Shown one piece after another: positions 18,101 through 62,025 of a DNA stretch of 64,000 nt (the first letter of the stretch is position 1; every line of letters starts with the position of its first letter). The stretch comes from Obrimoposthia wandeli (lineage: Eukaryota): the NCBI GenBank assembly GCA_977020255.1, contig CDROCS010001406.1, positions 558,001 through 622,000 on the forward strand. Direction: 5' to 3'. The position numbers were made by a program, and so were the translations under genes. The notes beneath the pieces are model-generated. The model saw nothing but the letters and a program-made list of their open reading frames with translations. It ran no database searches and was not told where the DNA came from.

Positions 18101-21100
18101 TTAGCCTATAAATTACAATGATTAAGGTTGAAGGATTTTCTCTTGTTGTTGGTGTATTTAACTTTCCTAATGTAATTAGAATACTTCTTTTAATTTAAAT
18201 AATGATTCTACAGTTTACTAATTTTATGATATATATTATTTTAAGTTTTGAGAAATAAATAAATTTCAGTAACAGTGACAACGGCTTCAAGAGTGCCGAA
18301 GAAAAAAGAACATTTCTGGATATGGATCTAGCCAAGGTCGACGAAGAGCACAGTGTTCAGTCCTGTCAATGTGAGCAATAAAATAATTGGTATCCAACAA
18401 GAAAACCTTCTGACCTGTAATCACAGATTAAATTGATATTTATATCATAAAACTTTTAAATGATTTTATTTATTTTCAACTGAAGTAAATTTCGTAAATA
18501 TCGTAAACTTTGTTTTTTCTTTGAAATGTGATTGCTTATAAAATAAACGGGATTAAAAATCTAATCGCGGTAAGAACAACCTGAATGCATTAGATTCACC
18601 AATTCATAGGCCTATATTGCTTTCAAGAAACAAAATATTCTTTTTTAACAGTGATTTAACATTTACAGTAATTTAACCCCTTAAAGCTCACATGTATTAC
18701 TTCCAACTAACCATCACTTATTTAATAGGTTAACTAGGATATAAATACAACATAAATTTCCTTAAAAAGCTCAGACGTCACTAGGGTGATGTGTGTGTCT
18801 ATATAGACAAAGCCCCCAATGAATCATTACGTCATACATGACTTATGTTCTTTATTCTTCTACTTTTGGTAATATATTTTCAAACTTACATATATTTTGA
18901 TCTGAATGTCACATTGACATAAGTTCTTTACTAACTGATAGCAGTATCATTCAAGAATCCATAACAAACTTTGTTAATAATATTATATTTTATATTTTAT
19001 AAGTAGATAATGTTATTTAAATTATTCTTGCACATAGGATGCACATAAGTTCGAAAAAAATGCAACTATTTATCATAAAGACATTTTGTAGTCCTAATGA
19101 GGACGTGAGGTCGTTCTCATATGAGTTTATAGAAGGACTAATTGTCAGTTAGTGTGTGGCAGTATGAATGGTTGACCATTTGGAGAACAACCAAATAAGC
19201 CCGGGAACTCTTCCACTTCCACTTCTTTGGGAAAATAGCACTTTTCATGCAAAGCGATCTCGCTTTCCATGAATTGCTTCAGTAAAATTTGGCTTGTCTC
19301 CATAATAATAAAATGGGGAAAAATTATCTTATATACTCTTCTTGAACTAATTAATTTTATTGATGCAGTAAAACAAATTTTCTTTTATTTAAAAATGAAT
19401 AATATAATAAAATTACGAATTAAATAAAGTACACATGATATATAATAACCTAGATACATTGACCTTATTAAAATAATATTATAAATCATTTTAATAAAAT
19501 TATTCTTGTTTAAATGATATAATTATGAAATTGATGTAACAAAGTCGTTATGAAAAATAGTTGTAACTTACGTGCGTCCTACGTGCAAGAATAATTTTAA
19601 TAATATTATCTAGTTATAAATATTAAATACAATATTATTAACTATGTTCGTTTTGAACTCTTGTAGGTGGTACCTGGAAGGTCGGAAGGTAAGTTAGGGT
19701 TATGCTATAGTGAAAACCACATTTCAATACGATCTTCAGATAAAAATATTTGTAAGTGTGAAAATATGTTACTAAAAATAGAAGAACATGCCATTGATAA
19801 CATCATCGATTAGTCATGGTCTTTGTTCCCCGAGAACAAAGACAATGAGTCATAATTTTTCAGGACAAAGAATATGACTCAGCGTGGCTTTTATCCTGAG
19901 ACATTCATATCCCTACTGGCGTCCATATATACTGGGTACGGATCTTTTCATGAATGGCTCAAACACAGACATTTCAGTACCCGATTACTATACCACTTGC
20001 ACTCATGTATGTTTTGAGTAGAAACGTCCAAAGCAAGGCTTCGGTTCGAAATGACTTCTATTTTAGAAATTCTTTACTTGTCTCAATCTTCATGAGTCAT
20101 TGACAGAACTAGTCCTGAAATGTCGATGGATAAACAATTACCATTAGTCAACGCGCCGTTTCCCTACATGGGGCCTGATTCATTTGATTCATTTATCACG
20201 AAAGTCTGTTGACTTGCTTAATAGCCCAGTTTATTTTAAATTTGTTTGATTTGATAAACTACTAAAGAGAGTAAATTGAATTTGAGAAAAATTGAAAATG
20301 ATTATTTAGAAAAAAATAACTAATCGAGAAGAAAGAATTTATACAGTTGTTGATGCCTAAAACAATCTGCATATTTTGAAAAGTCAAAGTTGTAAAAGCG
20401 AGCAAATTTGTATTTATTTGACCAATATCACCTGAGCACTGAATTATTGAAGAGAGATTTATAAACAATGAATAAATAAGAAGAAAATTTTTTGTTAAAT
20501 TTTCTAAACAGTAAAATTGACAATTAATCCTTCTAAAAATAAGAGAAAAATATAGGATAATCTAATTTGAATTCATCACTTGTAATGGGAAAGTGAAAGA
20601 TAATTAAGCGTTCACTCAGTCAAAGGGAGAAATTATTTTTGTTTGATCGAACTCCTCTAAATTTTTCTGTTTTTCCTTTTTCAGTAGATATTTCCTAAAG
20701 CGTTCTTCAATAAATGCTAGTCTGACTTCTAATTGTCTATTTCAATCGATTGTATAGTTAGATTTTTAAGGAAATATAATTTACCAAATTTCCTTTCGAT
20801 ATTTATGTTAAACCGGTTAGCATAAATATTAAAATTAATCTAAATTTTAAAATTTAAATTAACTGATTTTTACTACTTTGATTTGAAAGCAATAAATTTA
20901 TGTATAAAATTCGTTTACCAGCAATATTTTGCATAAATTACAAAATGTATTATTATTTATTTATATCAAAGATTGTAGACAAGTGCTTCCTAAAAATGCT
21001 TTTTTTCAAAAAGAAATATAAAAAAACTCTTAATTTATTGGCTGATATCAACCTGGAAAAACACTCAATCTGCTGACATAGATGTAAGAATAATTGCGAA

Positions 21101-24100
21101 TTATTTTGAATTTTGAACCTAGCTAATCTTACTGGAAATAACTTTCAGAAATGTACCAAACACAGACAATGTTAAATAAATTTAGAAATCATCATTGATA
21201 TTTCATTTTTCCTGCTTGTGTCGATTGTTGCCTTGAAACAATCGTTAACAGATATCACTAATGGCTTTGATATCTTGGTAAGATCTCCACGTACGACTGC
21301 AATAAAGAAATGCAACTTTACACTTTTCTTTTTTCATGCCATCAAAGAAGGTGCACTATAATAAATATGACAAGACTTGAGTTTAAAAATGCACCATGTC
21401 CCTTTCACCATATAATGAATATCTCTCCCGTCATCCATCCTTTCTATTTAACGTCTGCAAAAACTTTGTGAGAAAATTTTCTTCAGGCATAGTCTTCTCT
21501 TTGTTTGAAAATAACCATTGGTGCAGCTTTCCACATACTCCTATCTGACAAGGAACAACTGTAAAATTGTATTTTTCAGAACCTATCTTGATAATTTTAA
21601 TGTCCTCTTTGTCTTTCACAGCAAAAGTATAATTACTTGACATATCAAAACTTATTGAAAATTCGTAAAATTACCAATTTGTTTTGTATCACCTGTACAT
21701 GTCTTTCACCCATATATGTTCAGTAAGCTTCTTCTTTCTTTGCCCAATTTTGTGTTTTTTTTTGCTCAATCAAGGTCACACAATGAACGCTAAACATATT
21801 GGACGAAGGATAACTGACCCTTAAATCGCAATATCTAATGAAATTTCTATCGCCTTTGCTTTAAGATTCATGGCAGTTATTCAAACTTGCCGTCCATCTT
21901 TATTAAACAAGATAAGCCACACCCTCATATTTATTTCAAACAAAGGTTAAAATAAAATTCAGTCTCTCCAAGCTCTTTTTGTCGGATTCATAACAGTAGG
22001 TGAATGTGTCCGGTCTAATACACCCCCCTACACCCTGTCCTTTAAAACCGTGTATTTGTGTGGAGTGAAATTTTGAGTATGTGTGTGGAGTGAAATTTCA
22101 TGTATGTGTGTAGAGTGAAATTTCGTGCATGTGTGTAGGGATTTTTTTGTTGTTTTGAAAAAGCAACAAATAGGGAGGGGATTCCCCCCCAACATTTTTT
22201 AAAATTTTACTTTGAAATTTACCGCAGATCTCAAAAGTGATTAGAGAAGACCACAGGAATCCATATTGTCCCCGGCAGCTTATCGCAGATGAGATTTCAA
22301 ATAATATGTGAATATATTACTACTATTTTTAAGAAAGAATAATAAATTATTACATGTTTTTGTTAAATATTTAGGTCAGATCTATATAATTTAGAGGAGA
22401 AAAAACAAAATACGAGTCAAAATTATTTTTCAAAATATTTATTAAACATAAAACAACATATTGGCTTCACTCAAAGTCCAAAGAGGCTGCATTTTCCCGT
22501 CATCAGCAAAATATCCATTGAGACGTATTGAGATATTCCATAGTTCTTCATCTAGAATTGGAGCAATCAAATATCCTAGATCATCTTTAAAAGCCAGACT
22601 GGGATCAGTTTCAAGCTGGAAACAATTTCCTTCATATACATAATCAGGAATGTAAAATCCCAAAATATTTTTCAATTGATCAATATCAGATGTTGTTAAA
22701 ATTTCGATGAGATATTTGTTCTCCACTTTAGATATTTTCACGGGATTCATAACTCGTATAATTTGATGCCTCTTTAATATATTACATAGTTTTCCTTTTG
22801 AAATTCTTTCTGTATAATAAAAATCTCCTACACATCTCAGAAGAGGATCCATTCTAAAATAAGGAAACTGATTAAAAAACAATGTTTATAAAAAAATACA
22901 TATAAGATACAAATATTATGAAAAATAAAACTGATAATTAATTGCAAAATGAAAGAAACATAGATTAAAATTTATTGCATGAAATATTTAAAACATAGAA
23001 ATATGAGCACGTTCAATTTTCCACATAAGCAACTTTGTCCCCATTTCATCTTTCTTGTAACGATAAAGTCGAATTGTTACAGTCCATTGCTTCTTTTTCG
23101 GAAACGCATCAACATCTATTTATCTTCCATACTTCTCTAGAAATCCTGCATCGGCTCCTCGGATATAAAATTCGTTCTTACTGAAAGTAAAATTTGGTAC
23201 TGCTTTTTCAACTTTCTGTTTAAGATATTGAAAATCTGGTTTTTGAATATTTGATAGATAATAGCTGAACTTTCTTCTTTCAATTGTCACGGGATTTACT
23301 AAAGCAATCAGTTGAGCCTTATTCAAGAATCTGACTTTGTATTTGAAATATTATTTCACTTCTTCATACATATCCTTATCCGATTCTTTAAACATTTCTA
23401 AATCTTCGTCATCGCTTAATATCCGTTTGCTATCGTCCATCATTGATAATTGTCTTCTATATGAATGCATTTATTGGGATTTGTCCTCCAATGGCGCATT
23501 CTTTTATACTAATTTCTAACAAAGACATGAATCTCATTGGTTAATATATCTAAAGCATTAATTTGGATTGGACTAAATCCATATTAAAAATCAAAATTGA
23601 TTGGAAGAAATATATCATCCAATTATAATAGGTTTGCAAGATAATTACAAGAAATGTGCAATATAAAAGCAGGTTCAAACATATATAAAGAAGATTTTAC
23701 AGAATACAATTTTAGTTTAATGAAATTCGTAAATATATATTATAAAGGTAGAATAGAAGATGATGCTTCGTACTTACCATTCAATAAATGGAAGCCGAGA
23801 CAATATGTGAAAAAGTTTGACAATTTCACAGTTGTTATTTTACTCGAAGGTTATTTTTTTAGTTTCATATTGAATTCTTTTAGGAAATTGTCGTGTTATG
23901 GGATGCAAAATACTTATGCTTGAGTTCGAATTACCATTTGGAATTCGAATCACTGCAATACAATCAATCACGATTTCGGCTAATCTTGGGAAACAGATAA
24001 ATCTTTTAAAAACTGCAGAGAAAATGAAAGAAGAATGCATGTTTGAACCAAAATTATTTCCTGCTCTCAGTTATTTGAAGTTTAAACCGATATGTGTAAA

Positions 24101-27100
24101 TATATTTTTCAGTGGTAAAGTTATGATATTGGGATTGAAAAATTTTGATTATCCAGACATTGTTGATTTTATTTTCGAAAATATATCTTATTACATCTTG
24201 TTATCTTTTCTATAAACAAACCCGTTTAAACTTATTTTTTCAAATGAATAATACTATAAATACCGACAATCAAGTGGATTGTCTTGTCGACGAAATATTT
24301 TCTGGAAATATTAGGGGTAAAGAAATTTTATCAGAATTAAAAAATAATGATATAACAAGAGATAACATTGAAATATTGATTAGATCACACGTTATTTAAG
24401 AATTTAGAAATCGTACACAAATAAAAAAAACTATAGCCAAATATTCATTAATTAATTTTTGTATTTCATCTACAATAGCTCTAACATTGTACATTTCAAT
24501 AAGGAAACGTATATGATAATATAAACAATATTAAAAATGAAAGAGTATATGCAATGGAGCTAAATAATAATGCTGTATTTCAAATAGTGGGTCTCAGTGG
24601 AAATAGAAAGACACATTTCGTATGTAAATTGTTGCAAAATGAATCTCTTTTCAAATCTAGTTTCAAAAATATTTATTGGCATCATGGTGGAGGAGGGGAA
24701 AGCGGGTTAACCAAAACAGAAGTTTGCAAGTTGAAGGGAATAAAATTTATTGAAGAATTTGATGCAAATTGGTGTGAAAGATTGAAATAAGAAGATGTAA
24801 TAATAATTGATGATTTGTATCAGGAAGCTAACAAGGAATCAGACTTTAATCAATTATTTACGAAGATTGCAAGACATCGTGAAGTAACAGTTATATTTAT
24901 CACTCAAAATCTTTTTCACCAAGGAGGTCATCATAGAACAAGAAATCTTAATGTACATTAATTAGTTTTATTTAAAAATACTAGAGATCAAACAGTTGTA
25001 GATTTCGTAGCCAGACAGACATATCCCCAAAATAAGAACTTTCTAGTTGATTCATTCCATGATGCTGCTAAACAAGTACATGCGTATATATTTATTGACT
25101 TCACACAAGCTTGTCCAGATGATTTACGTGTTTTAACATACATATTTAATTCTAAGGGAGTAACTGTTTATAAACAAATAGAGAACAATTATAAAAAAAT
25201 AATTTGCAATGCCTTTTAAGAAGTTGATAGTAAAACGTAAAGTAAAATCTAAGAAATAAAAAAAAAGAATCATTAAGAAAAAAGAAGTGAATAAATTAAT
25301 CAAATCTGTAGTTAGAAATAAAAGAAAACTTAAATGGCTTCGAATATAAACAATATTCAAATTGAACTTTTTTAAAAATGAAGAAAATACAAAGAAGCAT
25401 ACCCTATTTTAAAGCTTTGGTCAAAGCCTCTTCTCACAAGAGAATGATTATTCTTAAAGTATTTCCTTCTTTTGTTGTAGATGATTTATTGGAAGTTTTG
25501 TATAATATAGTTTTGGGTCGAGTAAAATTTGGAAAACGGAAAAATGTATTAAAGAAATATAGAAAAACTCTTCTAGATATTGATAATGTAAAAAGTAAAA
25601 AACGGAAACGAAATATTATTCTTAAACAGAATGGTGGTTTCATACGGGCTGTTATTCCAGTTGTTGCTTCAATTATCAATAGTATTATAGCTGCGACACG
25701 TTCATAAACAATTATTTCAAAAATCAGTTAAAGATATGGGTGCTAACCCTTCTTTACCTAAATTTAAATTTTCTATATATTCAAATTGTTGTAATGGAGA
25801 AGACATGGTTCAATCTAAAAGATCCAATTGGCTACACAATAGCTTCAAAATTAGCACAAAGAACAAAACAAAATTACAAGAAAACGCAGAAATGGCTGAG
25901 CGACCAGTTAGCCTACAGTCTGAACAAGCCGATGAGAAGAAAGTTTACAACTAGAGCTTACAAAACTAGCGGTCCTAATAATTTATGGCAAATGGATTTG
26001 ATGGAGATGATCTCATATTCTTCCATTAATAAGGGATATCGATATATTTTAACATGTATTGATTTATTTAATAGGTTTGCTCGTGCAATTCCAGATAAAG
26101 CAAAGTCTTCAATAGCTTTGCTTGAAGCCATTAAAGAAATATTAAAAGAGGACATTCCACAAAATGTGCAAACTGATTCAGGAAAAGAATTTTATAATAA
26201 GCAATTTTAATCTTTATTTAAACAAAATAATATAAATCACTACTCTGTGTTTTCACAGTACAAACCAGCAATAGTAGAAAGATTTAATCGTACTTTAAGA
26301 GATCGAATAAAAATTTATATCACAAAAGGAGTAAATAAAAAAGGGATCCAAGTTTTACCTAAAATAATACATGCATATAATCACTCTGAACATAGAGGTC
26401 TCAAGGGAATGAGACCTTTTGATGTTACTAATAAAAACTCTATGGATATTTGGATGGACAGGAATAAAAAAAAACTATTAAAAAAGCTAAATATAAGAAA
26501 AACGAATATGTCCGAATTTCGAAAATTAGCTCTACTTCATTTATTAAAAACTTTTATCAGAATTGGAGCGATGAAATATTTTGTATAAGTAAAATTGATC
26601 AAAAGAGTAATCCAATAATGTATACTATTAAAGATGCTGACAATAATATCGTTCACGGTAAATTTTACGAGCAAGAACTACAAGTAATATCAAATAAACC
26701 TAGCGTTTTCCGTATTCAAAAAATATTAAAATCTAAGAGTACCGGTAAATATAAACAATACTTTGTTAAATGGCATGGTTATTCAGACCCAACTTGAATA
26801 TCAGCATCTAATATAATATGGAGTCTATGTAAATGGTGTTACCTAGTAACGGATGCCCGAAAACTCAACCAGATAATGACACTAGTAGCTTTATTATCGA
26901 ATAGGAAAATCCTATAAATCTCCAAGGAGAATGGAAAGCGGCTTTAACAGAATTTTCTTTTATTATTCTCTAATTACTATCAGAAAAAACTCACATATTT
27001 CGTTTACAAAATAATTTGATCATGAAAAAACAACTGAAGTTGTGATCGGGTTTGATAGTAAAGGAAATTTCAATTACAATTGTATAGATAAAGAAGTGAA

Positions 27101-30100
27101 AGTTACATATGAAAATAACAAAGTCAGATTTTAAAATAGATTAAAATTTCTTCAAGCTATTAAAATTACATTTGAATCTGAAAAAGAAGCTCTTCAATTC
27201 AGTTTTGATAGTGAACAAACAGTATCTCGTAATAGACGGGATGTAGTCTCATCTAAATCGGTTAGAAATGTTCCTGATAGTGTAGCAAAAGTGTTGTTAC
27301 TTGAAACGAGACCAAAGACTGTAGTGGAACTGAAAATGTTTTCAAAATATTATAAAATAGATAGTGAAGTGGATTTATGTATATTAATACAGTAGGAATG
27401 TAGTGAATATTTGTTCAAATGTATGTTCAAATAAAAGTACTAAATCGGGATGGTACTAATTTAGATGAAAATGCAGATGTAACACCTGTAAATTATCTCT
27501 TTAATTCTGTATTTAGTGATGCCATTGTTACTCTTAATAATGTCAAAATTGAAGGTGGAAATTCTTCCTATGCTCATAAAGCTTTGATTGAAAGTCTTTT
27601 GAATTATAGTACTGATACTCAAAATACTAATTTGGCAACTATTGGTTATGATAAAACGGTCGCAACTAGCAAAGAATGGATTGCAGGTTCTAAAGCTTAC
27701 GAAATGTGTGGGTATTTGAGATTGAATTTCTTTGAACAACCAAAATATTTAATTCCCGGTGTTAATGTACATCTTCGTTTGAAACGTAATAAATGGAATT
27801 TTTCTTTGATAAGCACAGACGTTCTAAAACCTAGACTTGATATTTTGGATGGAAAATTGTATGTCCGAAGAGTTAAAACCGAGCAATCAGTTTTAATGGC
27901 ACATAATATAGGAATGGAAAAAAACAATGCTTGTTATCCTATTAGAGAAACTAAACTTATATCCTACTCTTTAGGTACGGGTACACAAGCTTTTAATAAG
28001 GATCAAATTTTTGGTGATGTAAGATTACCGAAATTCATTTTAATTTCTTTTCAAAAAACTGCAAAGTATCTAGGAAATTATGCGACAGATGTAACTCAAT
28101 TTGACAATCTTAATGTAGGTTCAGTGACACTTTCAAGAAATACTGATTATCGCGAAACATATAAAACAGATTTCGAAGGTAACACTTATGCTTTGGCTTA
28201 TACGCAATCTATTATTCGGAATTTGGGTCAACTAGATAAAAATATAAACAATGGTATTTCTTTCACTGAGTTTAAAAGTAGCTGCCCGTTCTTCACATTT
28301 GTTTTGGCACCAGACTTTGATATAAACTAATGCCAACTACCAAAGGATGGAAATTTACGACTAGAAATTAAGTTCAATGCAGCTTTAACACATCCTACTA
28401 CGGTGCTTATTTACGGAGTATTTGATTCGGAAATACAAATCAATAAAAACAGAACTGTCATATTATAGAATGGAGTAAGACAATTTTTAATTTATATTTA
28501 TTAATTTTTATTTAGTTTAGTACAAGTACAAGAATCAGCAGAGAAAGTCTTGGGTGATAAATTCAATGGAGTTTATCCAATTGATATGATTCCATTTTTT
28601 CAATCTGGAGGATACATTATCAATACTCATACTTCGAATTTATCAGGAGAACATTGGATAGCTATTTATGTTAGAGAGTGGACAATACATGTATTTGATC
28701 CACTTGCAATGTATTATCCACACAAACTTGTTTCAACTATTCAAAAAGGACGAAGAAGAGTATTTTACAACAAGATACAATATCAGGATCCTACGACGAG
28801 AAACTGTGGAAATTTATGAATTTTATGGTTATCGTTGCAAAACGATTAATGTGTTATAATAATAAATATTTTTAATGTTTTATTTTGAATTATTTTTGAA
28901 ATCCCTAAAAAATATAAGGGTAAAATAATAAAAGACATAAAACGAAATTTTTTAATACATTTATTCAGCAAAATATCACAACGAGATATGCCAGTAAAGA
29001 TAAGGCCCAACCTAAAAAAAGTATTGAAATTACAAAAAGTTAGTCAAGGTGCCATAGGGATCTAAAATTTAAAAAAACTAAACTAAAAAAAATCAAAAAA
29101 TGAAAACCGTTTAAATTCGGAAGTGTCCATAAGCCAGGCTAGCGTTCTTTCTACTCAAAAGCGCTTGTCGTCATTACTACTCAAAGCGATTTTTGTTGAT
29201 TTATGGGAATACAGTTGATGGGCTCTTGAAATAAATCTAGTTTGCTCAACGCTTTGAATACACCCAGTATCATAAATTTTCCGGTAGGCCTCATGTGTAA
29301 GATTGTTTCTTCCCACACCCTTTGCTCTCATTGAACATGTATTATTAGATGCATGTAAAGTGTAGCATTCAAGACGTAGGAAAATACAATCATCATACGA
29401 AACCTGTCCCTCGCTTTCCTCCTTAAATTTCCCGATAATATCCTTTAAACTGATAGAGTGTAGAGGATGGTTAGCGGAATATTTATGGGTATCTAGTCCC
29501 TAAACATTGCCAGTAATAAATGATTATCTAAACTAACATTTTTACATTCTAAAAAGAAAGAGTCAGTGTCCCCAGCTGCGATTTTGATCTCACAATTGAA
29601 TTCTTGTCGATATTTCTCTAATTCTAGGTATTGAAGCTCGTACATTCTGAGTTTAGAAATGTCTAAAACCGTCTGACCTATATAACTCGGTAAACCGTAG
29701 ACAAATACGTTTCTGCAAGTCCTCTACAGTTTTTCCAAAGAGACTATTACTTTTTAACTTGTAAAAATTCCCAATCGAATTTGCTAGTGGCCAAATTACG
29801 TCTTCTAGAATTCTTCTCAATATAATCTTTAAACACAAAGTTTTGACTGAAGCTTATAGCACGATGAATTCGAGTGACTTTCGCTCCCAACTTTAAGTAG
29901 AATTGAAGAAGCCGCCAATGCATCACATAATTTAAATTGTCTTCATGTGTTAACAATAATTTCTTAACCTTTGAATTAGGTGGGCATTGATGAACAGGCG
30001 CTACTGGAAGATCATCTAATTTATCATGCACATTGGGAGGGATTTTTAAGTCAACCTCAACCAAATAGCCGACGTCTGATGAAACTGTATCAACAGTAGC

Positions 30101-31653
30101 CAAATCTGTCATCAATTTATTCAACTCTTCCTCATCATAAACCCACTTAAAGTTGGCATGAGGTAGAGGTTGAGTAAGCGCCCACTCATACAAATTATTA
30201 ATGTCGATGTACAGAATCTCCGTGGATTGATTTTTGACAATATGATGTTTGTTGACAAACGTCATTCCACCGCGTATACCATAATCATACATTTGATACA
30301 TCGTGGGATCTTGCAGTAACTCGATATTAATTTTAAGATTTTGTTATTGCTGTTGCCCATGAAAGACCAGGTAAACTAAAGAAATGCATGGGATCTAGCC
30401 CATCTTCTGCTAAAGATTTTACACGAAAGGACTCAAAAACATCAGCTAAAAGATAAATGTCTAACTTCATATAATAAAGCATATATTCTAAAAGATTTTG
30501 AAAATTATTCTCCCAAAATGTACGGGCCTCATTATAGTTTTGAAGACTTACACCCTCAAATTCAGTTATGGTGGGATTTCTGTAGTATTTTCTAAATCTG
30601 CAAAGATTTTCGCAAATTTATACGGAAAAATCCCCTTATCGTTAACCGAAGCTGGAAACACTGACTGTGTAATTGGCCATGCATTTAAAGATGCCGTTAA
30701 ATTTTGTAAAGACCCACTCAAAAACTGCAGAGAATCTATGAATCTAAAACTACAGAATTCAGTATATGCAGTTAAAGATAAATATTTCTCTGAAGTTTGA
30801 GGTATACATGAAATTTCCCAAGAGCTTAATGTACCCAACGCGTATTTAAGTATATGATGAAAATCATATCCTTTGAGATTATGAAACACGATGGGAATGC
30901 GTGATTTTTTAGGGAGACGACGGCCAAATTTACAAAGGTTGCACGCCGCTCCCAAGTATCACCCCGTAACATGATCGTGATATCTGACTAACATAGACTG
31001 GGTTCCACACAAATAACATAATATACAAGAATTACAATTAACCCAGTCTATGCCTGTCATGATCATTGCTTGATGAGCATTAAGATCATACCACGGTTTG
31101 ACAATTGTAGTTCCTAATTCTTCTAATTTTAACATAAAATCTAAAATACAATTTGGACCGAAACATTTATGATACTGTGTAATATTGGGGCCTAAGAATA
31201 GTATTCCTGCTGAAGCCGGTAGGTGAATACTCACATACTGGCCGAGCAATGCTAGAATTGACTCAAAATCCGCATACACCCTGAATTCCACGGGTATGCA
31301 TTTTGCCCAATCCCTGAATTTTAAATCCTTGTCCTTAGGCATGCTATATAGCGTACTGTCATCAGGAATCAGTGTACATAATGTCAGATGTTTGTTGTAA
31401 GAGATCTCGGATTGGAATCCATGCAAACATATATGACACCACTTACACCTTATCCTAACCGGTAAGGCTCCATTATCTAAATTTAGAAGACGATCTAAAT
31501 TGGGAATTGCAGCATAATGGAATTTTTTATTATGTTCGAGCAAAATTAAGTTGAGCTGAGTCCCCTCATTTTTGCTCCTATAAATTACATCTACAAAAAG
31601 GATTTTCTTTTTAATTTCTTCATCTGTTACATTAACTGGGATATCAGTATTAT

Positions 31654-31725
<72 letters not shown>

Positions 31726-34700
31726 CAAACATTATCTTCATCTGTTACATTAACTGGGATATCAGTTTTATATTTGAATACATTTATACTCAAGTTATTA
31801 GCGTGTTCAAATCTTGATATCGCAGTTAATTTAACAGGAAAATATATTCCATGATACTGCAATTCATTTAAAAAAGGGATATATTTACTGACACGCTATC
31901 TATGCTCAGTAATTACATCCCTTTTGAGGATGGCCAACACGCTATACAGAAAGCAAAGGTTATCACTGTTTTGTATGTTAACATTGGAACGTGAAAATTG
32001 AAGAGATCTGTAAAGGACTGTATGAACTCCCCGAAAGATATATAATGTCAGTGAACTTTGTAAGAACAAAGCTAACATCGTGAATTCTAACTAGAGTCCA
32101 TCCACTACTTAACTCGCTATAATTAGCAATTTTTTCATCTAGGTTTCTCCCAATTTCAGTTACAAAATTATCATAGAAAACAGTTGCTTTATGTGAAATT
32201 ACCCAAGTTTAAAATAAATGATGTCTAACCTCATTCGTCGCTTTTATTCTCCTAACAGCATGTATCGGAGATTTCGGCCTTTTGAAGGGTTTAGGCGTTG
32301 TATTATCCGCTTTCGGAGTTGGAGTAGCAGAGGGAGTGAGACCATCCCAATCGTCGGTGAACAGGTCCCACTCGTCCTCGTCCAATTCTGCCACCATCGA
32401 CTCGTTGGCTCCTGGGGCTCCGATACTTGGCTGTATCCATTCGTCGATGAATGTAGTCCAGTCTCCCTCCCCATCCAACGGTACGTCATCGGTGAGCAGC
32501 TCCTCGTCTGAGTCTGGTGCGAGGACTTTCTCTGGCTGAGACAGCGGGATCAATTTCCGGTGGCGTTTGATTGCCGCCTCAAAATTGTCGAAGATATTGG
32601 ATCTCCTTGCTGCTACTGCCGAAGTTGCTGAACAAGCGGTTTCTGTGTTCTGGCGGGGAGTACAGTCTTCCCAATTCTCAATCGAATTCTGACTTGTCAG
32701 GTCAAAATATTGGGATCTCTGTAACCCATCTCTCATGTTCATTGGTTCTTCTCTAGGAATTGAGCTGGCCAATGGCGGTTCTTCTTGTAACAGGTCCGCT
32801 GTTGCTGCTGCTTCTCCTTCACTCACCATCGACGAGTCTTGACTAAGTAAGTCAATGTACTGCGCCTGTGGTGGTGTTCGCTGCTGTACTGGAGAGAGAT
32901 CCTCATATAGTTGAACCTCTTGATTCAAATCGACGTTGTTGTAGAATGGCATTGTTGAATTAGGAAAATTAATGAACGGAGGTGTCTTTATATACACAAA
33001 CATCTTACTAACCCTCTTTTATCGTCCAATGAGCGCGACTTATTCAAATAATTTATTTTATTTTTTGTAGTTATTTTCGCGCCCGGAGAACGAGAATAGA
33101 GCCCGCTCCGAAGGGGTGGGCGGTGTGCGGGGTTGATGGGGTTGTGGGGTGTGGTATGTGTCGTATACATGTGTGGTTGTCATTGTGATTGGATAAAGTG
33201 AAAGAAATATACTGTAGCGTCCGGAGGGCATTATTTTTTGTAGTTATTTTCACGCCCGGAAAACGAGAATAAAGCCCGCCCCAAATATTTTGGGACCCCC
33301 AACCCCTTATATTCGTTGCTTTTTCAATTTTTTTTTAATTCGCTACACACATGCACGGTTTTAAAGGACAGTGGTACCCCAAGGTGGGTGGATTAGACCG
33401 GACACATCCACCTACTCATAACTTTTAAAGTTTTCTGTTTCTTCCTCCATAGTCGAGCATTGTTCTCATTTTTTCATGTTTTATCGTTGTCACAATGAAC
33501 TTCACAATTATCAAATTTCTTTCAAACGAATATGATTGTCAATGTTTTTTTTATATTCAATGGTGATTAATATTTATCAATAATAATTTTCAAAATTACC
33601 TTAAGTAAAGTTTTACATTAAGTTAAGTTTTAATTTAATAAAATTTTAATGTACATTATGCAATCGCGTGTTTTATAGAAGGAATTTAGGATATATTATT
33701 TATTAATTCTATGTTATTCATGAATTTGACCAATACAATATTAAAATAAATATTTAAACACACTTTTTAATCTTTCTAAATTTGACCAATATTTTTATAC
33801 CCTTTTTCAAAGTTCATTGCTCATTGTATCATATGCATGTGTATCTAATGATCAAACTAGTTTTAAGTTTTATTTTATTTGGGATTATTTTGAAGTCAAA
33901 CTCCGCTCCCATTGGCATCAATCTTCCCAAATTTCAGTGGAATCAGAAAACAGATGCTGAAAAGCCGATATTCTATTCGCATATATGGATTCCCTTCACT
34001 ATGAAGCTGCCCGTTGGCTTCTGGGAGACACATGGGAATATGGTGGCCTTTGTTGTTCATAGAGACTGGTCGAAGATACTGCAAACGGCGGTTCTAGTGA
34101 CGAAGAACGGATTGGTCTACCACGGCCGCGGGATGGGTGACCTTGTGGTGTTGGGTGTGAATGGCGACTCGCTGAACCGACAAGCAGCGGGCTTGAGTGG
34201 CAAGATATCATTCTCGGAACTGGCAGGACATTTCACTTTCTCCGTGGTGCCACTGAACTGGCCCTCTAGATTTCTCGTTGGCACATCGCAGCTTCTGAAA
34301 ACGAGGCTGCCACATAAGTACTTCTTCAAGAATCTTCTGCTAGAGCGCTTAGAAATGAACAGACAAGCGTCAATCTACAATGCCAATTTGATAATCCATC
34401 GATCAAACGTCTTTATTGACAATATTCGCACAATTTCCCAGAATGTCAAAGTGACGATATTTTTAGCTATTCCTGTTGCGATTGTCATAGTTTTTGGTGT
34501 GGTCATGTTCATCTCGTGGATTTTGTCTATTGTCAGATACTGTCGATTATTGAAGATAGTTCAACGAGGCACCGTAAATACAATTCAGTTATAATTTTCA
34601 CTTTAGTGATTGATTTCGTGGGAAAATATTAAATATTTTTATTTCTTCAACTTTGAGATTCTACACGTAAATTAAATATATTTTTATATTATAAGAGTTT

Positions 34701-40700: not shown

Positions 40701-43700
40701 AGATATTTATTAAAGAATTTATTTTAAAAATTCGATACTGTACATAGTACCTTTATATTTCTAGCTCCCCGATCAATAATTTGTCTGCATATTGGATAAG
40801 TTATTAATTTTCTTGAACATGTTAAACATGTTTTCAAATGACTTCTGGGGAGAAATATGATTTCTTAGAAGAAATTTGACTTCTACATCATCAGTTAAAC
40901 ATACTCAACATTCAGGATATTCTAACATGTATGATAAAATATTAACAAATTGTTTATCCGGTTCTATAATTAAGTATGATAGATCAAACAATAAACCTAC
41001 AATTGATTTAAAATCACATTCAGTTCTCAATCTATAATTTGAAACCGACTTTATTCTTTCTTTTTTGAAATTTATTTTCATTTAAACAACCTGAGAATTT
41101 ATTTCCAATTTGTTTATCGGTTATACGATGTTCAATAATACAATCAATATAATTTTTAAGTGAAAGTTCTCTCCATGGGACATTTTAAACTTTCATATTC
41201 ATAATAAATGAGGAACATGTTTACTATGACGTGACATCGGTTTATTATCAAATTGCCTACATGAACCACATTGACTAAATACACAAAATACTTCATCATC
41301 AGGTTTCGATTTATTATGTTTAGATAATCCGGCCTTTGCTAATTCACTTGAAAAAGTATTGGATTTAAAATTTAAGATCAATGAGGAATATGTATTCACT
41401 TCTAATCTATACATGTATCATATTTAACTTGCATTTTTAAATATTTCATCTTTCTTGTAGTTTAATGGTCAATTACAGTTCTATAATAAATTTTATTTTC
41501 TACTAAACCATCACTTCTCATTTAAGACGATATTTATAGAAAAAACCAGTATCTTTTAAATTATTGACATAACATCATAATAATAATCCCTATCTTAAGT
41601 CCTACAATTATAACCTTTCCACTGGAGAATATGTTGACACATAATGGATTATATTTATTTACTCGGAGTGAAGGGAATAATTCCAGTTATAATATAAAAC
41701 CTGGTCCTAGTTTCATTGATAATTGATATTAATTGTCTTTCTTTCCAACAACCATAGTTACTGTAACTGATTGAATTCTTTCTATTTACATCGCATTCTT
41801 CGACAACTTCCTAAAAATAAATATCAATAATTATATCCCAAAGAGAACATACCTGATTTGAAAATAACTAAAGTATAATCTGCATACTTTTTTATATTGA
41901 CTTATAAACATCCACTGCCGTTGAGGAGTAACCAGGATTGGCTAGTCGATAAATTCAAAATATTCAGAACAGAAAAAAAATTAAATACACATCTGACAAA
42001 TTAACGCATTACACAAACTTCTAAAATTTATGTGTTTACAAAATAATTTTTTCCTCTCTTTGGATTTTACGTTTCAACAATAAAATCCCAATTCGTGAAT
42101 TTTTAAAATATCTGGGTTCAGCACATTTGATGGATATGGCTGAACTCCTTTTCTCTTAATCCTTTTTGAAATTGAGTATTTCCTTACAGCTTCAGACGGA
42201 GATTTACCGTCAAATGCAAAATACCAGCTTTTAATAATCATAACTGTTTCTTATTAGAATTTCCGTTTGTAAATTGTGAAATTATACATGTAAGGCCTTT
42301 GTGTGGGAATTTCCCACTTATGAGAACTATTTCCTTTGACATCTGTTATTTTTGTCGTGTTTGAGACTCAATAACATACGAATGTGAAATATAATGTTGA
42401 TCGGGATATCGGGTTACAATGGGCCTTTGTTTGATTTTGAAACAGATCTAATTTTCTTTACTTTGAAATATTTCTGTTAAAGTGTTTTTATTGATTATTT
42501 TTACAGTTTGGAGGGACGGTATGTTTTCCATGCGGTGATAAAACATGATAAATCGTACTTAAATGTGCAAAAATTATTATTCATTAATATTGTAGTTTAA
42601 AGCCATTTCGAGTTTGGGGAGTGGAAACAGCGGTTTGATAGTCAGCGATTAATTAACTGACCCAAGTCCCCAGTGGCTGCTTAATTTTTGCTGATGCTGC
42701 CCGGTATATGTGCGGGTGTGTGACTGGGCGATGGTGCTTGTCGAATCAGTTTGTGAGCAATGATGGCCTCTCTTTGAGTTATGAGTGTGCATAAGGGTGT
42801 CAATGTTTTTAATTTTTTATGAATCTAATTTCAGCTGTTGGATATTTATAAATAGAATTTAAAATTATGAATGGTGATGTGTTTATTTTTTATTTTAATT
42901 CATTAGATCAGCAGCGTTCGAGTATTTAAAAAGCACATTTATATTAAAAGATATCATATTTAAATATTAAACTCCATGAATAATATTGCTTTAAATATGA
43001 ATATTTCAATTCAATTAAACTTATAAATATTCATTTTTATAGGGTTCATTCAGTATATTTTATTGAGAATCCCATTTCTGTTTTACTTCCTAGTTAGTTA
43101 AATTATTTTAGTAAAATGATTCAAAGTAATCAAAATTTTAAACCGTAAATTTACTCTATATTTTAAGTTTTATTTTAGTGATGTATAATGTTCTGAATAA
43201 AGATATTTATTATTAAATTTACAATGGAACGAATATTCAAATATTATGAAAGGTCAAGCGACATAATTATGATTAACACCTTTTAAATTTTTATTTAAGA
43301 TTAATTAACTGACCCAAGTCCCCAGTGGCTGCTTAATTTTTGCTGATGCTGCCCGGTATATGTGCGGGTGTGTGACTGGGCGATGGTGCTTGTCGAACCA
43401 GTTTGTGAGCAATGATGGCCTCTCTTTGAGTTATGAGTGTGCATGAGGGTGTCAATGTTTTTAATTTTTTATGAATCTAATTTCAGCTGTTGGATATTTA
43501 TAAATAGAATTTAAAATTATGAATGGTGATGTGTTTATTTTTTATTTTAATTTATTAGATCAGCAGCGTTCGAGTATTTAAAAAGCACATTTATATTAAA
43601 AGATATCATATTTAAATATTAAACTCCATGAATAATATTGCTTTAAATATGAATATTTCAATTCAATTAAACTTACAAATATTCATCAGTCAACTTTAAA

Positions 43701-61500: not shown

Positions 61501-62025
61501 TTTGGCTACAATCTGAATCGGAGTCTCGAATTTATCAGCGAAGAAACTCAGCGCAGCTTCGATCTCGTCAAGATCCGGAAATTGGAGTTCCTGATGATGC
61601 AAACGAACCTGTCTCACTGGCTGGAGCGCTTCTGTGAGTTGACGAAGGCAGAACTTGATGAGCAGGACTGTCTGCTGGTATTGAGCATTGTCTCCAAGCT
61701 GGATGTGTTGCCGCCCGATTCGTGTGAGACAATCGCTGGCACCATGAAGACAGCAACAAGTCGGGCCAAGCTTTGTCTCAACGAATTTTTCAACTACGAC
61801 CAGCAGAAAATCTCCGACTGTCTCAGTCAAATCACTGAGCTGCGCTGTCCTCGATGCACGTCACTGTGTGACTTCAATCTCTTCTGGTTGCATTGCAGCA
61901 AGGGTCACAAGCTCAAGCGCTGCATCAAGACGCTGGAGCTTTGTGCAGACAAACATCGCCAGTGTTTGAACTGTGGTGCATCGGAGCTAGCCTTTGACCT
62001 CGTCAATACAAGTGAGTCTTTTTAA
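58591..62025 (+). CDS. GTF3C4: General transcription factor IIIC 90-kDa subunit-like (TFIIIC-delta N-terminus + C-terminal Zn finger)
   Basis: Phase-consistent exons 58591-58861, 58918-59035, 59078-59156, 60342-60380, 60436-62025; IEWSP..KEFLAIMKGDGRI motif; C-terminal CPRC...HCSKGHKLKRCIKTLELC...CLNC matches the zf-TFIIIC pattern. Confidence 0.72.

What the first reader, a model, noticed from the sequence alone, without database searches (positions are those of the whole stretch)
23720..24215. A Maverick/Polinton that carries its own TATA-binding-protein-like gene
Seen in sequence: inside the TIRs, just upstream of the packaging ATPase, is a ~150-aa protein with both TBP repeats in correct register ([18 protein letters not shown]; [37 protein letters not shown]). 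Repeat 2 keeps both DNA-intercalating Phe positions (LFP, IFxSG), while repeat 1 has W/L there, so the saddle is asymmetric. Established: TBP homologues occur in large nucleocytoviruses but are not among the core Polinton genes (pPolB, INT, ATPase, PRO, MCP, mCP). Inference: this lineage encodes a promoter-recognition factor or a TBP decoy that could redirect host RNA polymerase to element promoters or sequester TBP partners. I cannot confirm whether this has been reported.
Basis: partly seen in the sequence, partly recalled or inferred. Interest (0 to 1): 0.92.

Follow-up and report, generated by a model that had tools for sequence, protein, structure and literature searches.

The report
Maverick virus-like element encoding mini-TBP
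A decayed copy of a Maverick/Polinton virus-like element carries a shortened relative of the TATA-binding protein; this gene is a standard part of a whole lineage of such animal-type elements and probably helps switch on their particle-building genes.

Summary
At 23720-24215 (+) a two-exon gene with a 34-nt GT..AG intron encodes a 153-aa TATA-binding-protein (TBP) family protein. Exon 2 alone hits Pfam PF00352 (E 1.7e-11) and solved TBPs (E 2e-12).

It lies inside an 11.4-kb Maverick/Polinton (21995-33416, TIRs, 6-bp duplication CATAAC), upstream of the packaging ATPase.

It is not a one-off capture of host TBP. About 60 sequence clusters of 145-175-aa relatives exist. Every long contig examined, including 6 of 6 chosen through the capsid gene, links the gene to the same ATPase, integrase, capsid and polymerase genes.

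A confident model of a relative (pLDDT 96) is a TBP saddle. Its C-terminal repeat is complete and its N-terminal repeat has lost both helices.

New here: the morphogenesis genes carry the 7-mer TATAAAC about 30-45 nt before their start codons (31 of 45). The TBP-like (0 of 28) and integrase (0 of 10) genes do not.

The window copy is a relic: ATPase, integrase, capsid and polymerase genes are broken. A second, ruined TBP-like copy at about 41.6-42.0 kb shares the intron position.

Function is inferred: a promoter factor for the element's late genes. The only precedent found is a figure-legend label in the 2021 adintovirus paper.

The parts
21995..33416 (.). Decayed Maverick/Polinton (adintovirus-like) element, 11,422 bp
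   Evidence: The terminal 25-mer is found only at the two ends, in inverted orientation. The core genes are homologous to and syntenic with intact metagenomic relatives.
21989..21994 (.). Left target-site duplication CATAAC
   Evidence: Read directly; identical to the 6 bases after the right end.
33417..33422 (.). Right target-site duplication CATAAC
   Evidence: reverse-complement view.
21995..22061 (+). Left terminal inverted repeat (starts AG...)
   Evidence: blastn of the ends: 67/72 nt, 83% identity; exact 35-nt core (pair I17).
33345..33416 (-). Right terminal inverted repeat
22442..22882 (-). Unknown ORF (146 codons from the tool's TTG start; first ATG 38 nt after a TATAAAC at 22884-22890)
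   Evidence: no Pfam hit.
23003..23326 (-). Small conserved accessory ORF, divergent from the TBP-like gene
   Evidence: tblastn to L003 6796-7125 (-), E 2e-5. The same neighbour occurs in 8 related loci.
23662..23690 (+). Two ordinary TATA-like boxes (23662-23669 and 23682-23690), 58 and 38 nt before the TBP-like start codon; no TATAAAC
   Evidence: Read. Relatives have TATAWA at -35..-45 in 12 of 29 and TATAAAC in 0 of 28.
23720..23849 (+). TBP-like gene, exon 1 (43 codons plus the first base of a Gly codon): strands of the truncated N-terminal repeat
   Evidence: Colinear with the N-termini of uninterrupted relatives; 28.3 bits to the family HMM.
23850..23883 (+). 34-nt phase-1 intron (GT..AG)
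   Evidence: The same position and phase are interrupted by a 42-nt GT..AG in the second copy.
23884..24215 (+). TBP-like gene, exon 2 (end of repeat 1, linker, complete C-terminal TBP repeat, stop codon)
   Evidence: PF00352 E 1.7e-11; PDB TBPs at 2.3e-12; model pLDDT 92.3 and TBP-only fold matches.
24211..24217 (+). TATAAAC motif, 33 nt before the ATG of small ORF 24244-24399; overlaps the TBP-like stop codon
24244..24399 (+). Small ORF (51 codons), unknown
   Evidence: no Pfam hit.
24520..24526 (+). TATAAAC motif, 34 nt before the ATPase ATG
   Evidence: Found at -32..-36 in 7 of 11 related ATPase genes.
24554..25219 (+). Packaging ATPase (A32/FtsK type), broken: 2 in-frame stops
   Evidence: 70% identical to the intact L098/L003 ATPases. 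The L098 ATPase hits Pox_A32 at 26.6 bits against a cut-off of 22.8.
25345..25351 (+). TATAAAC motif, 33 nt before the ATG at 25378
25378..25707 (+). Small conserved ORF (109 codons), open
25740..26818 (+). rve integrase, broken: 2 in-frame stops and 1 frameshift
   Evidence: PF00665 36.7 bits; counts.
26818..27410 (+). Remnant of the gene after the integrase (possibly the minor capsid gene). Only about 44 of 345 residues of the L098 relative are matched; 1 stop; large deletion
27419..28465 (+). Major capsid protein, broken: 1 in-frame stop and about 59 N-terminal residues missing
   Evidence: 56% identical to the L003 MCP over 352 aa, E 2e-131; weak DJR-like Pfam hit; counts.
28505..28840 (+). 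Adenain-like protease homologue (state not assessed in detail)
   Evidence: tblastn to L005 5418-5798, which hits Peptidase_C5 at 28.2 bits.
29114..33003 (-). Protein-primed family-B DNA polymerase, broken: 9 aligned pieces with 8 frame changes and 3 in-frame stops
   Evidence: PF03175 on two pieces; counts against the intact 1191-aa L098 polymerase.
41594..41990 (-). Second TBP-like gene copy, ruined: several in-frame stops, at least one frameshift and an internal deletion. It has a 42-nt GT..AG intron (41811-41852) at the same codon and phase
   Evidence: tblastn E down to 4e-17; DNA read.

Best explanation
**What is shown**
- Region 23720-24215 is a spliced gene for a 153-aa, strongly diverged member of the TATA-binding-protein family.
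- It belongs to the standard gene set of one lineage of animal-type Maverick/Polinton (adintovirus-like) elements.
- In a confidently modelled relative, the protein is a minimal TBP saddle:
  - The C-terminal repeat is complete. It includes the stirrup that canonical TBP uses to dock TFIIB, and both DNA-kinking Phe positions.
  - The N-terminal repeat keeps only its beta-strands. It has lost helices H1 and H2, part of its stirrup, and one Phe position.

**What is inferred**
- The protein is made early from an ordinary TATA-plus-initiator promoter by the host machinery. The intron implies nuclear Pol II transcription and splicing.
- It then binds the extended TATA-like 7-mer TATAAAC(A). This 7-mer sits about 30-45 nt before the start codons of the ATPase, capsid and other morphogenesis genes.
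- It recruits host TFIIB and RNA polymerase II there, giving the element an early/late expression programme.
- Losing the convex helices of repeat 1 would free it from host factors that dock on that surface of TBP.

**The copy in this window**
- It is a fossil in a dead element and is probably not functional itself.

**Confidence by step**
- TBP-family identity and lineage-wide conservation: about 0.95.
- True intron: about 0.85.
- Late-promoter factor mechanism: about 0.45.
- The single figure given for this explanation (0.5) weighs the whole statement, mechanism included.
For: **Identity**
- PF00352 hits on the window protein, and on an intact relative at E 1.7e-19 with both repeats detected.
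- Family profile against PDB TBPs: E 7.5e-20.
- hhalign: C-half 99.6%, and N-half 90.8% and colinear with TBP repeat 1.
- AlphaFold model of relative P0005: pLDDT 96.2, pTM 0.86. The top 44 PDB fold matches are all TBP, with TM 0.70-0.74.

**Lineage gene, not a capture**
- 600 hits, 60 of them at E<=1e-10, and about 60 clusters of 145-175 aa.
- 27 complete ORFs, with dN/dS about 0.13-0.16 in the least saturated close pairs and a median of 0.31.
- Linkage to ATPase, integrase, MCP and protease in 11 loci with enough flank.
- 6 of 6 contigs chosen through the capsid gene carry the gene.

**TFIIB-side stirrup kept**
- P0005 columns E98, P99, E100 and P103 are conserved in at least 90% of 38 sequences, and F102 is invariant.
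- They align to the C-terminal-repeat stirrup of solved TBPs.

**Promoter classes**
- TATAAAC occurs in 35 of 91 upstream regions against 0 of 91 gene-body controls.
- 38 of 65 occurrences lie 20-49 nt before an ATG, with a peak at 30-39.
- It precedes ATPase 7/11, MCP 10/11, the small conserved ORF 7/11 and the post-MCP ORF 7/12.
- It precedes the TBP-like gene 0/28 and integrase 0/10. Fisher p = 5e-10.
- It also precedes genes that diverge from their neighbour, so it is not merely the upstream gene's poly(A) signal.
- In the window element it stands 33-34 nt before three ATGs.

**Established knowledge, not tested here**
- TBP's C-terminal repeat reads the 5' half of the TATA box and its N-terminal repeat the 3' half.
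- The altered N-repeat would therefore face the part of the motif that departs from a standard TATA box.
Against: - No binding, expression or transcript-start data exist for any member.
- TATAAAC contains a perfectly good TATA box, so host TBP could read it. From my own knowledge it also fits the forkhead-factor consensus RYAAAYA.
- The motif is absent from about a third of the 'late' genes scored. The polymerase gene gave mixed results: absent in the two loci read directly, present in the one scored.
- The loci are related to each other, so the Fisher test overstates independence.
- No TBP-less sister lineage was available to ask whether the motif and the gene travel together. The lineage is absent from IMG/VR.
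- A motif-to-ATG spacing of about 33 nt would imply very short 5' leaders.
- The full-length model is of a relative that is 49% identical over exon 2, not of the full window protein. I could not pass the spliced product to the structure tools by reference.
- The window copy has changes at 4 of 23 family-conserved positions, including one stirrup residue and one Phe.
Confidence: 0.5

Rival explanations
1. TBP decoy or competitor. The protein occupies host TATA boxes or titrates TFIIB or other TBP partners. This damps or re-routes host transcription (host shut-off, or silencing of rival elements) rather than activating the element's own promoters.
For: The TFIIB-side stirrup is kept while the surfaces on the N-terminal repeat are lost. 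That pattern suits a partial mimic. The gene sits in an accessory module beside host-interaction genes: Bcl-2 in L098, MATH/TRAF in L003 and L093, and an IAP-like fragment next to the second window copy.
Against: A decoy does not explain why a conserved extended TATA motif marks the morphogenesis genes and is excluded from the gene's own promoter. Three of the four Phe positions and the Asn of repeat 1 are conserved, which points to real DNA binding rather than pure partner titration.
Confidence: 0.2
2. Architectural DNA-bending protein with a non-transcriptional role. The saddle bends element DNA for protein-primed replication, integration or packaging.
For: The TBP fold is a general DNA-bending saddle. 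The gene lies next to the packaging ATPase in one synteny type.
Against: In the other synteny type the gene sits after the capsid-protease block, so adjacency to the ATPase is not fixed. No TATAAAC or other shared motif is seen in the window's TIRs. Retention of the TFIIB-type stirrup has no obvious use in such a role.
Confidence: 0.12
3. The gene is real and conserved, but host TBP or a forkhead factor reads the TATAAAC motif. The TBP-like protein serves some other transcription step, for example at polymerase III-type or TATA-less promoters as TRF2/TBPL1 does in animals.
For: The motif embeds a canonical TATA box and fits a forkhead consensus (own knowledge). Animal TBP paralogues are known to have left TATA binding.
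Against: Unlike what is established for TRF2/TBPL1, the family keeps both Phe positions of the C-terminal repeat and one of the N-terminal repeat. The strict exclusion of the motif from early-type genes still needs a class-specific reader.
Confidence: 0.15
4. One-off retro-insertion of host TBP mRNA, or chance resemblance.
For: None found. The only point in its favour is that the window copy lies in a decayed element.
Against: - The gene has an intron, which a processed mRNA copy would lack.
- Dozens of diverged relatives in the same synteny.
- Only 21-25% identity to solved TBPs overall, with no preference for animal TBP.
- E-values down to 1e-20 exclude chance.
Confidence: 0.01

Closest known systems
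Cellular TATA-binding protein (TBP, Pfam PF00352) of eukaryotes and archaea
   Same: - Same family by sequence.
- Same saddle fold.
- C-terminal repeat complete, with both Phe positions and the TFIIB-side stirrup columns conserved.
   Different: - About 150 aa instead of a core of about 180 aa.
- The N-terminal repeat lacks helices H1 and H2 and part of its stirrup, and one Phe position is not conserved.
- The central Asn of the C-terminal repeat is replaced by a near-invariant Ser.
- No N-terminal tail.
- Only 21-25% identity overall.
- Encoded by a mobile virus-like element.
TBP homologues of giant viruses (Nucleocytoviricota)
   Same: Virus-encoded TBP-fold proteins. They are the best matches in the viral structure library, for example Heterosigma akashiwo virus at E 5.9e-9.
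   Different: The giant-virus proteins are longer (186-500+ aa) and are weaker matches than cellular TBPs. They serve viruses that bring their own RNA polymerase. This lineage has no polymerase gene for RNA and must use the host's.
Beta- and gamma-herpesvirus late-gene TBP mimics (BcRF1 / UL87 / ORF24 family)
   Same: Working analogy from established knowledge: a viral TBP-like protein reads a non-standard TATA variant on late promoters and brings in host RNA polymerase II. The fold library returns them as distant matches (E 7e-4 to 1e-2).
   Different: Only a remote fold resemblance (TM 0.33-0.36). They are much larger proteins that act within a multi-protein viral complex. There is no sequence-level relationship. 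This is an analogy, not membership.
'TBP' gene labelled in maps of midsize eukaryotic linear dsDNA (MELD) viruses by Starrett et al. 2021 (PMC8502044; bioRxiv 10.1101/697771)
   Same: A TBP-like ORF is noted in polinton/adintovirus-like genomes, listed in the same legend as TRAF-like and UCH-like genes. Relatives found here also carry MATH/TRAF genes.
   Different: It appears only as a label in a figure legend, under 'non-animal datasets'. There is no analysis of architecture, conservation, promoters or function. I could not see the figure or the sequences, so identity with this family is unverified.
Animal TBP paralogue TRF2 / TBPL1
   Same: A diverged TBP paralogue used for a specialised promoter set (established knowledge).
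   Different: No named TBPL1 entry came back from any search, so the relationship is untested. By established knowledge TBPL1 keeps the full two-repeat size and has lost the Phe pairs. This family is shortened and keeps three of four.

Membership tests
TBP family (PF00352) | Significant match to the family profile above the curated threshold | tested here: met
   Window exon 2: 44.3 bits against a cut-off of 22.9, E 1.7e-11. Intact relative L098: 69.9 bits with two matched stretches. Family profile against PDB TBPs: E 7.5e-20.
TBP family (PF00352) | Two tandem repeats forming one saddle | tested here: inconclusive
   - The saddle is present in the model of relative P0005 (pLDDT 96.2; TM 0.70-0.74 to TBPs).
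- The N-terminal repeat has strands only and matches TBP repeat 1 only at hhalign 90.8%.
- The full spliced window protein could not be modelled, because no reference exists for it.
TBP family (PF00352) | Two pairs of DNA-kinking phenylalanines | tested here: not met
   The family keeps three of four (P0005 F43, F102 and F118 are invariant). The first position of repeat 1 is deleted or variable. The window copy keeps two of four, with Leu at the F43 column.
TBP family (PF00352) | C-terminal stirrup used to dock TFIIB | tested here: met
   In P0005 numbering, E98, P99, E100 and P103 are conserved in at least 90% of sequences and F102 in 100%. They align to the same stretch of solved TBPs. The window copy differs at one of these columns. 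Actual TFIIB binding is not testable here.
TBP family (PF00352) | Sequence-specific binding to a TATA element and nucleation of a pre-initiation complex | not testable with these tools
   Only indirect evidence: a TATA-like 7-mer at fixed spacing before one class of element genes.
Maverick/Polinton (adintovirus-like) element | Protein-primed family-B DNA polymerase and retrovirus-type (rve) integrase | tested here: met
   PF03175 on two polymerase pieces and PF00665 on the integrase. Both genes are broken.
Maverick/Polinton (adintovirus-like) element | Capsid module: double-jelly-roll major capsid protein, packaging ATPase, adenain-like protease | tested here: met
   - MCP 56% identical to relatives, with a weak DJR-like Pfam hit at E 0.0044.
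- ATPase homologous to the L098 ATPase, which passes Pox_A32.
- Protease homologous to the L005 ORF, which passes Peptidase_C5.
- The minor capsid gene is mostly deleted.
Maverick/Polinton (adintovirus-like) element | Terminal inverted repeats and a 6-bp target-site duplication | tested here: met
   TIRs of about 70 nt at 83% identity, starting AG. CATAAC on both flanks.
Herpesvirus late-gene TBP mimic (BcRF1/UL87/ORF24) | Homology to that family | tested here: not met
   Only distant fold matches (E 7e-4 to 1e-2, TM 0.33-0.36) and no sequence hit. The likeness is functional analogy only.

The most novel reading that the evidence does not exclude
A lineage of 15-20-kb Maverick/Polinton (adintovirus-like) elements of animals runs a two-tier transcription programme with its own stripped-down TBP. 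Host TBP fires the early genes, including the mini-TBP. The mini-TBP then reads an extended TATA variant (TATAAACA) on the particle-building genes and recruits host TFIIB and Pol II, while being blind to the host regulators that dock on the missing helices. It would be the smallest natural TBP. It would also be the first promoter-specificity factor known for this class of elements, a small-genome counterpart of the herpesvirus late-gene TBP mimic.
Probability: 0.4. Interest if true: 0.8.

Novelty: new variant of a known kind. Interest (0 to 1): 0.62.

Why it matters
How Mavericks/Polintons and adintoviruses control their own genes is essentially unknown. They have no RNA polymerase and were assumed to rely wholly on host factors.

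A conserved, element-encoded TBP, together with a promoter motif that separates morphogenesis genes from early genes, turns that question into something testable with expression and structural data.

The protein is also a natural experiment in how much of TBP can be removed. Both helices of one repeat are gone while the saddle and the TFIIB-side stirrup remain. That bears on which TBP surfaces are needed for basal function and which for regulation.

For genome annotation, the gene and the motif are useful markers of this lineage. The shared intron shows that these elements have long been transcribed and spliced in the host nucleus.

Tried and rejected
**Searches that found nothing**
- Word-index homologue search with exon 2. 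The exhaustive search was needed.
- Exact-protein look-up of the window ORF.
- tRNA and Rfam scans of the window.
- IMG/VR. With the family alignment it gave only distant hits at 27-39% identity, probably giant-virus or cellular TBPs. With the capsid alignment it gave nothing. No TBP-less sister lineage could therefore be compared.
- Supplementary files of the adintovirus paper are not held.

**Host identification failed**
- The TFIIIC-like ORF has no detectable relatives by the word index.
- The cluster look-ups carry no organism names.
- The WGS prefixes of two related contigs appear in no paper.

**Hypotheses tested and rejected**
- Alternative genetic code. Re-reading TAA/TAG as sense opens everything in this AT-rich DNA and tells nothing. 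The in-frame stops align with several different amino acids in intact relatives, so they are mutations and not a reassigned codon.
- Shared intron in metagenomic relatives. Clusters that start at the Met inside exon 2 looked promising. The one checked (L001) is simply cut by the contig end and is uninterrupted. The shared intron was found instead in the second window copy.
- Poly(A)-signal reading of TATAAAC. The motif also precedes genes that diverge from their neighbour.

**Limits of what was run**
- dN/dS: all pairs are saturated at synonymous sites (dS > 1.2), so the ratios are only rough.
- A labelled TBP/TRF2/giant-virus phylogeny was not possible. No tool returns named comparator sequences.
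- The full spliced protein could not be sent to the family, structure or search tools, because it has no reference and I did not type it.

Full report
**1. What is at the coordinates**

- Region 23720-24215 (+) reads as two open pieces. Piece A is 23720-23849 (43 codons plus one base). Piece B is 23884-24215.
- The pieces are separated by 34 nt that begin GT and end AG. A script found only two GT..AG removals that restore one open frame, of 34 nt and 22 nt.
- Piece B alone passes the curated Pfam threshold for TBP: PF00352, 44.3 bits against 22.9, E 1.7e-11.
- Piece B matches 35 distinct solved TBP sequences and nothing else of significance. The best match is an archaeal TBP at 2.3e-12, aligned to the C-terminal repeat.
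- Piece A alone hits nothing in Pfam.

**2. The splice model**

- An exhaustive profile search found 600 relatives at E<=1e-3 and 60 at E<=1e-10.
- The top group consists of proteins of 145-175 aa in which piece B begins at about residue 45, which leaves room for piece A.
- Aligned together, piece A and piece B are colinear with uninterrupted relatives. Exactly one column lies between them, a Gly, which is what the split codon encodes.
- Against a family HMM, the 34-nt product aligns end to end at 157.1 bits. The 22-nt alternative scores 148.0, and the two pieces score 117.2 and 28.3.
- The metagenomic relatives have no intron; L001 was checked directly. That raised the worry that the 34 nt are just an insertion in a dead copy.
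- The window settles this. A second, diverged TBP-like copy (about 60-65% nucleotide identity) lies at about 41594-41990 (-). It is interrupted by a different 42-nt GT..AG stretch at the same Gly codon and in the same phase.
- An intron shared by two diverged copies is a real intron of this host's sublineage.

**3. The surroundings**

- A 25-nt terminal sequence occurs only at 21995 (+) and 33416 (-), with none expected by chance.
- The ends align over about 70 nt at 83% identity. The six bases CATAAC flank both ends.
- Inside lie, in order:
  - an unknown ORF and a small conserved ORF on the minus strand;
  - the TBP-like gene, then a 51-codon ORF;
  - an A32-type ATPase, then a 109-codon conserved ORF;
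  - an rve integrase, then the remnant of the following gene;
  - the major capsid gene and an adenain-like protease homologue;
  - on the minus strand, a protein-primed family-B polymerase.
- This is a Maverick/Polinton of the adintovirus type.

*State of the copy.* It is a relic. Counts are taken against intact relatives:

| Gene | Breaks |
|---|---|
| ATPase | 2 in-frame stops |
| Integrase | 2 stops, 1 frameshift |
| Gene after the integrase | almost wholly deleted, 1 stop |
| Capsid gene | 1 stop, about 59 N-terminal residues missing |
| Polymerase | 9 aligned pieces, 8 frame changes, 3 stops |

- The in-frame stops align with several different amino acids in intact relatives. They are mutations, not a variant genetic code.
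- At this break density, roughly 18 breaks over about 1,900 aligned codons, a 153-codon gene would escape by chance about one time in four. The open frame of the TBP-like gene is therefore no evidence that this copy is still used.
- The copy also differs from the family at 4 of 23 invariant or near-invariant positions.

**4. A lineage gene, not a capture**

- Contigs carrying relatives show the same neighbours, in two arrangements:
  - small ORF (-), TBP-like, ATPase, small ORF, integrase, ..., capsid;
  - capsid, protease, an ORF of about 160 aa, TBP-like.
- To avoid circularity I started again from the capsid gene. 70 capsid relatives were found. All six long contigs fetched through them (L091, L093, L095, L096, L098, L101) carry a PF00352 gene beside the ATPase.
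- L098 (16.3 kb) has every core gene open, plus a Bcl-2 homologue next to the TBP-like gene.
- That capsid protein, identical in sequence, lies on at least 20 contigs. Three near-identical copies were fetched from three assemblies.
- Other relatives carry MATH/TRAF genes. These accessory genes point to animal hosts. The host of the window itself could not be named.
- 27 complete coding sequences were recovered. Synonymous sites are saturated. The closest pairs give dN/dS of 0.13-0.16 and the median is 0.31, which indicates purifying selection.
- The family is about equally distant from archaeal, microsporidian, plant, yeast and human TBPs: 57-74 bits, and 21-25% identity over the full length. 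It does not nest in host TBP.

**5. Architecture**

- An AlphaFold model of relative P0005, built with a 38-sequence family alignment, is very confident: pLDDT 96.2, pTM 0.86.
- Its 44 best PDB matches are all TBPs, with TM 0.70-0.74.
- The C-terminal half has the full TBP repeat. The N-terminal half has four strands and no helix of four or more residues.
- Profile-profile comparison confirms that the N-half is a truncated TBP repeat, colinear with TBP repeat 1 (90.8%, E 1.2e-6). It has gaps at helix H1 and at the tip of the stirrup, where the first Phe would lie.
- Conserved columns in P0005 numbering:
  - F43, F102 and F118 are invariant;
  - E98, P99, E100 and P103 of the C-terminal stirrup are conserved in at least 90% of sequences;
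  - the Asn of repeat 1 (N7) is conserved in at least 90%;
  - the matching position of repeat 2 is a near-invariant Ser (S71).
- The window's own exon-2 product also models confidently (pLDDT 92.3) and matches only TBPs, at rmsd 2.2 A.
- In the viral structure library the best matches are giant-virus TBPs. Herpesvirus late-gene TBP mimics, asfarvirus-like proteins and poxvirus early-factor proteins follow at a distance. All are longer, and none comes from a Polinton, adintovirus or virophage.

**6. A promoter pattern found here**

- Counting k-mers in the 100 nt before 91 ORFs of related contigs singled out TATAAAC. It occurs in 35 upstream regions against 0 of 91 gene-body controls. In 78% of occurrences it is followed by A.
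- Of 65 occurrences, 38 lie 20-49 nt before an ATG on the same strand. The peak is at 30-39 nt.

Presence of TATAAAC 20-60 nt before the start codon, by gene:

| Gene | Loci with the motif |
|---|---|
| Capsid (MCP) | 10 of 11 |
| ATPase | 7 of 11 |
| Small conserved ORF | 7 of 11 |
| ORF after the capsid gene | 7 of 12 |
| TBP-like gene | 0 of 28 |
| Integrase | 0 of 10 |

- Taking the four morphogenesis classes together (31 of 45) against the TBP-like gene gives Fisher p = 5e-10. This is an upper bound on significance, because the loci are related.
- The motif also stands before genes that diverge from their neighbour, so it is not simply the previous gene's poly(A) signal.
- The TBP-like genes instead tend to have an ordinary TATAWA at -35..-45 (12 of 29) and an initiator-like ATCAY at -5..-20 (13 of 29).
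- In the window element the 7-mer is three times denser than outside: 9 in 11.4 kb against 14 in 52.6 kb. It stands 33, 34 and 33 nt before the ATGs at 24244, 24554 and 25378.
- The TBP-like gene here has two plain TATA boxes and no TATAAAC.

**7. How it most likely works**

*Shown:*
- a conserved, selected, minimal TBP;
- the TFIIB-side stirrup and three Phe positions kept;
- the repeat-1 helices lost;
- two promoter classes;
- an intron, implying nuclear transcription and splicing.

*Inferred:*
- The protein is an early product that reads the TATAAAC(A) boxes of the morphogenesis genes and recruits host TFIIB and Pol II.
- By established knowledge, the C-terminal repeat of TBP sits on the 5' half of the TATA box and the N-terminal repeat on the 3' half. 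The altered N-repeat would therefore face exactly the part of the motif that departs from a standard box.
- Also by established knowledge, several host regulators dock on the convex helices of repeat 1. A protein lacking those helices would escape them.

I put this mechanism at about 0.45. The rivals are a decoy or competitor (0.2), another transcription role with host factors reading the motif (0.15), an architectural role outside transcription (0.12), and a one-off capture or chance resemblance (0.01).

**8. Comparison and novelty**

- Virus-encoded TBP homologues are known in giant viruses. Functional TBP mimics are known in herpesviruses.
- For Polinton-type elements, full-text searches turned up a single precedent. 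Starrett et al. [quoted passage not shown] The same legend lists TRAF-like and UCH-like genes.
- That paper does not analyse the gene. I could not see the figure or its sequences.
- The following appear to be new:
  - the lineage-wide conservation;
  - the helix-less N-repeat;
  - the promoter dichotomy;
  - the shared intron.
- I rate the finding a new variant of a known kind.

**9. Slips and limits, stated as required**

- (a) While reasoning I wrote, from memory, a few short stretches of canonical TBP sequence in my working thoughts. All comparisons rest on tool output.
- (b) Early on, before I had recognised the element as decayed, my working thoughts named the coordinates of two ORF ends in the ATPase. 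They are not repeated here.
- (c) Searches printed three-frame translations of window stretches as they stand, with stops visible.
- (d) One search printed, and notebook entry 3 repeats, which amino acids intact relatives carry opposite four in-frame stops. No positions were given. I used this only to exclude a codon reassignment, and I do not repeat it here.
- (e) joined the two exons inside scripts to test the splice model. Only lengths, the intron and scores were printed. At the intron had not yet been shown to be shared by a relative; some searches showed that later.
- (f) hhalign and the alignment tools printed consensus lines of their own accord. I used none of them.

The full spliced protein was never passed to a search or structure tool. 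The host species remains unknown.

Noticed in passing
window 34968-43444: Long inverted repeat (arms 34968-36255 and 41906-43444, in blocks of 84-94% identity with internal duplications). It encloses the second, ruined TBP-like gene just inside the right arm. No other Polinton core gene was detected between the arms. It looks like the shell of a second adintovirus/Polinton-like element with kb-long terminal repeats.
   Followed up: partly
window 41199-41414 (-): A 71-codon ORF with a BIR/IAP-domain hit (PF00653, E 0.0014, below the curated cut-off). It lies directly downstream of the second TBP-like copy on the same strand. The adintovirus paper mentions IAP and Bcl2 homologues as accessory genes.
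   Followed up: partly
L098 3563-3940 (-); L003 854-1858 and 5476-6447; L093 3952-4941: Intact relatives carry host-interaction genes beside the TBP-like gene. L098 has a Bcl-2 family protein (PF00452, 40.2 bits). L003 and L093 have MATH/TRAF-domain proteins. This suggests animal hosts and an 'early/accessory' module.
   Followed up: partly
L098, L099, L100 (ENA ERZ2272806, ERZ2271722, ERZ2271472); L101-L104: Identical capsid proteins occur on many contigs from several independent assemblies. These contigs are often among the largest in the assembly (NODE_2, NODE_3) at about 4-7x coverage. This fits either a circulating virus or one host genome sequenced repeatedly. No sample metadata were available.
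   Followed up: no
upstream of TBP-like genes in 29 related loci: A second recurrent motif, TTTGTTTTA, occurs in 10-15 of 29 upstream regions against about 1-2 expected. It is found mainly in the synteny type where the gene follows the capsid-protease block.
   Followed up: no
window 60415-62022 (+), with about 55 nt just upstream: A 536-codon open frame at 44% G+C within 28% G+C DNA. It has a weak TFIIIC-delta hit (E 0.02) and a Cys-rich C-terminus. A GTAAGT...ACAG intron-like stretch of about 55 nt precedes it. It is probably a host gene exon. No homologue was found by the word-index search.
   Followed up: partly
window 55791-56177 (-): ORF with DUF1759 (PF03564, 31.6 bits), the Gag-like domain of BEL/Pao retrotransposons. 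This suggests an animal host and a transposon-rich region. Strong GC and AT skew runs across 54-58 kb.
   Followed up: no
window 482-736 and 18952-19663: Two short inverted-repeat structures: 83-nt arms 89 nt apart, and roughly 100-nt arms about 510 nt apart. They may be MITE-like elements.
   Followed up: no
window 22040-22140 and 33058-33285: Sub-terminal direct repeats lie inside the element ends. On the left are tandem units of about 30 nt rich in GTGTG...GAGTGAAATTT. On the right is a 55-nt unit repeated 173 nt apart at 91% identity.
   Followed up: no
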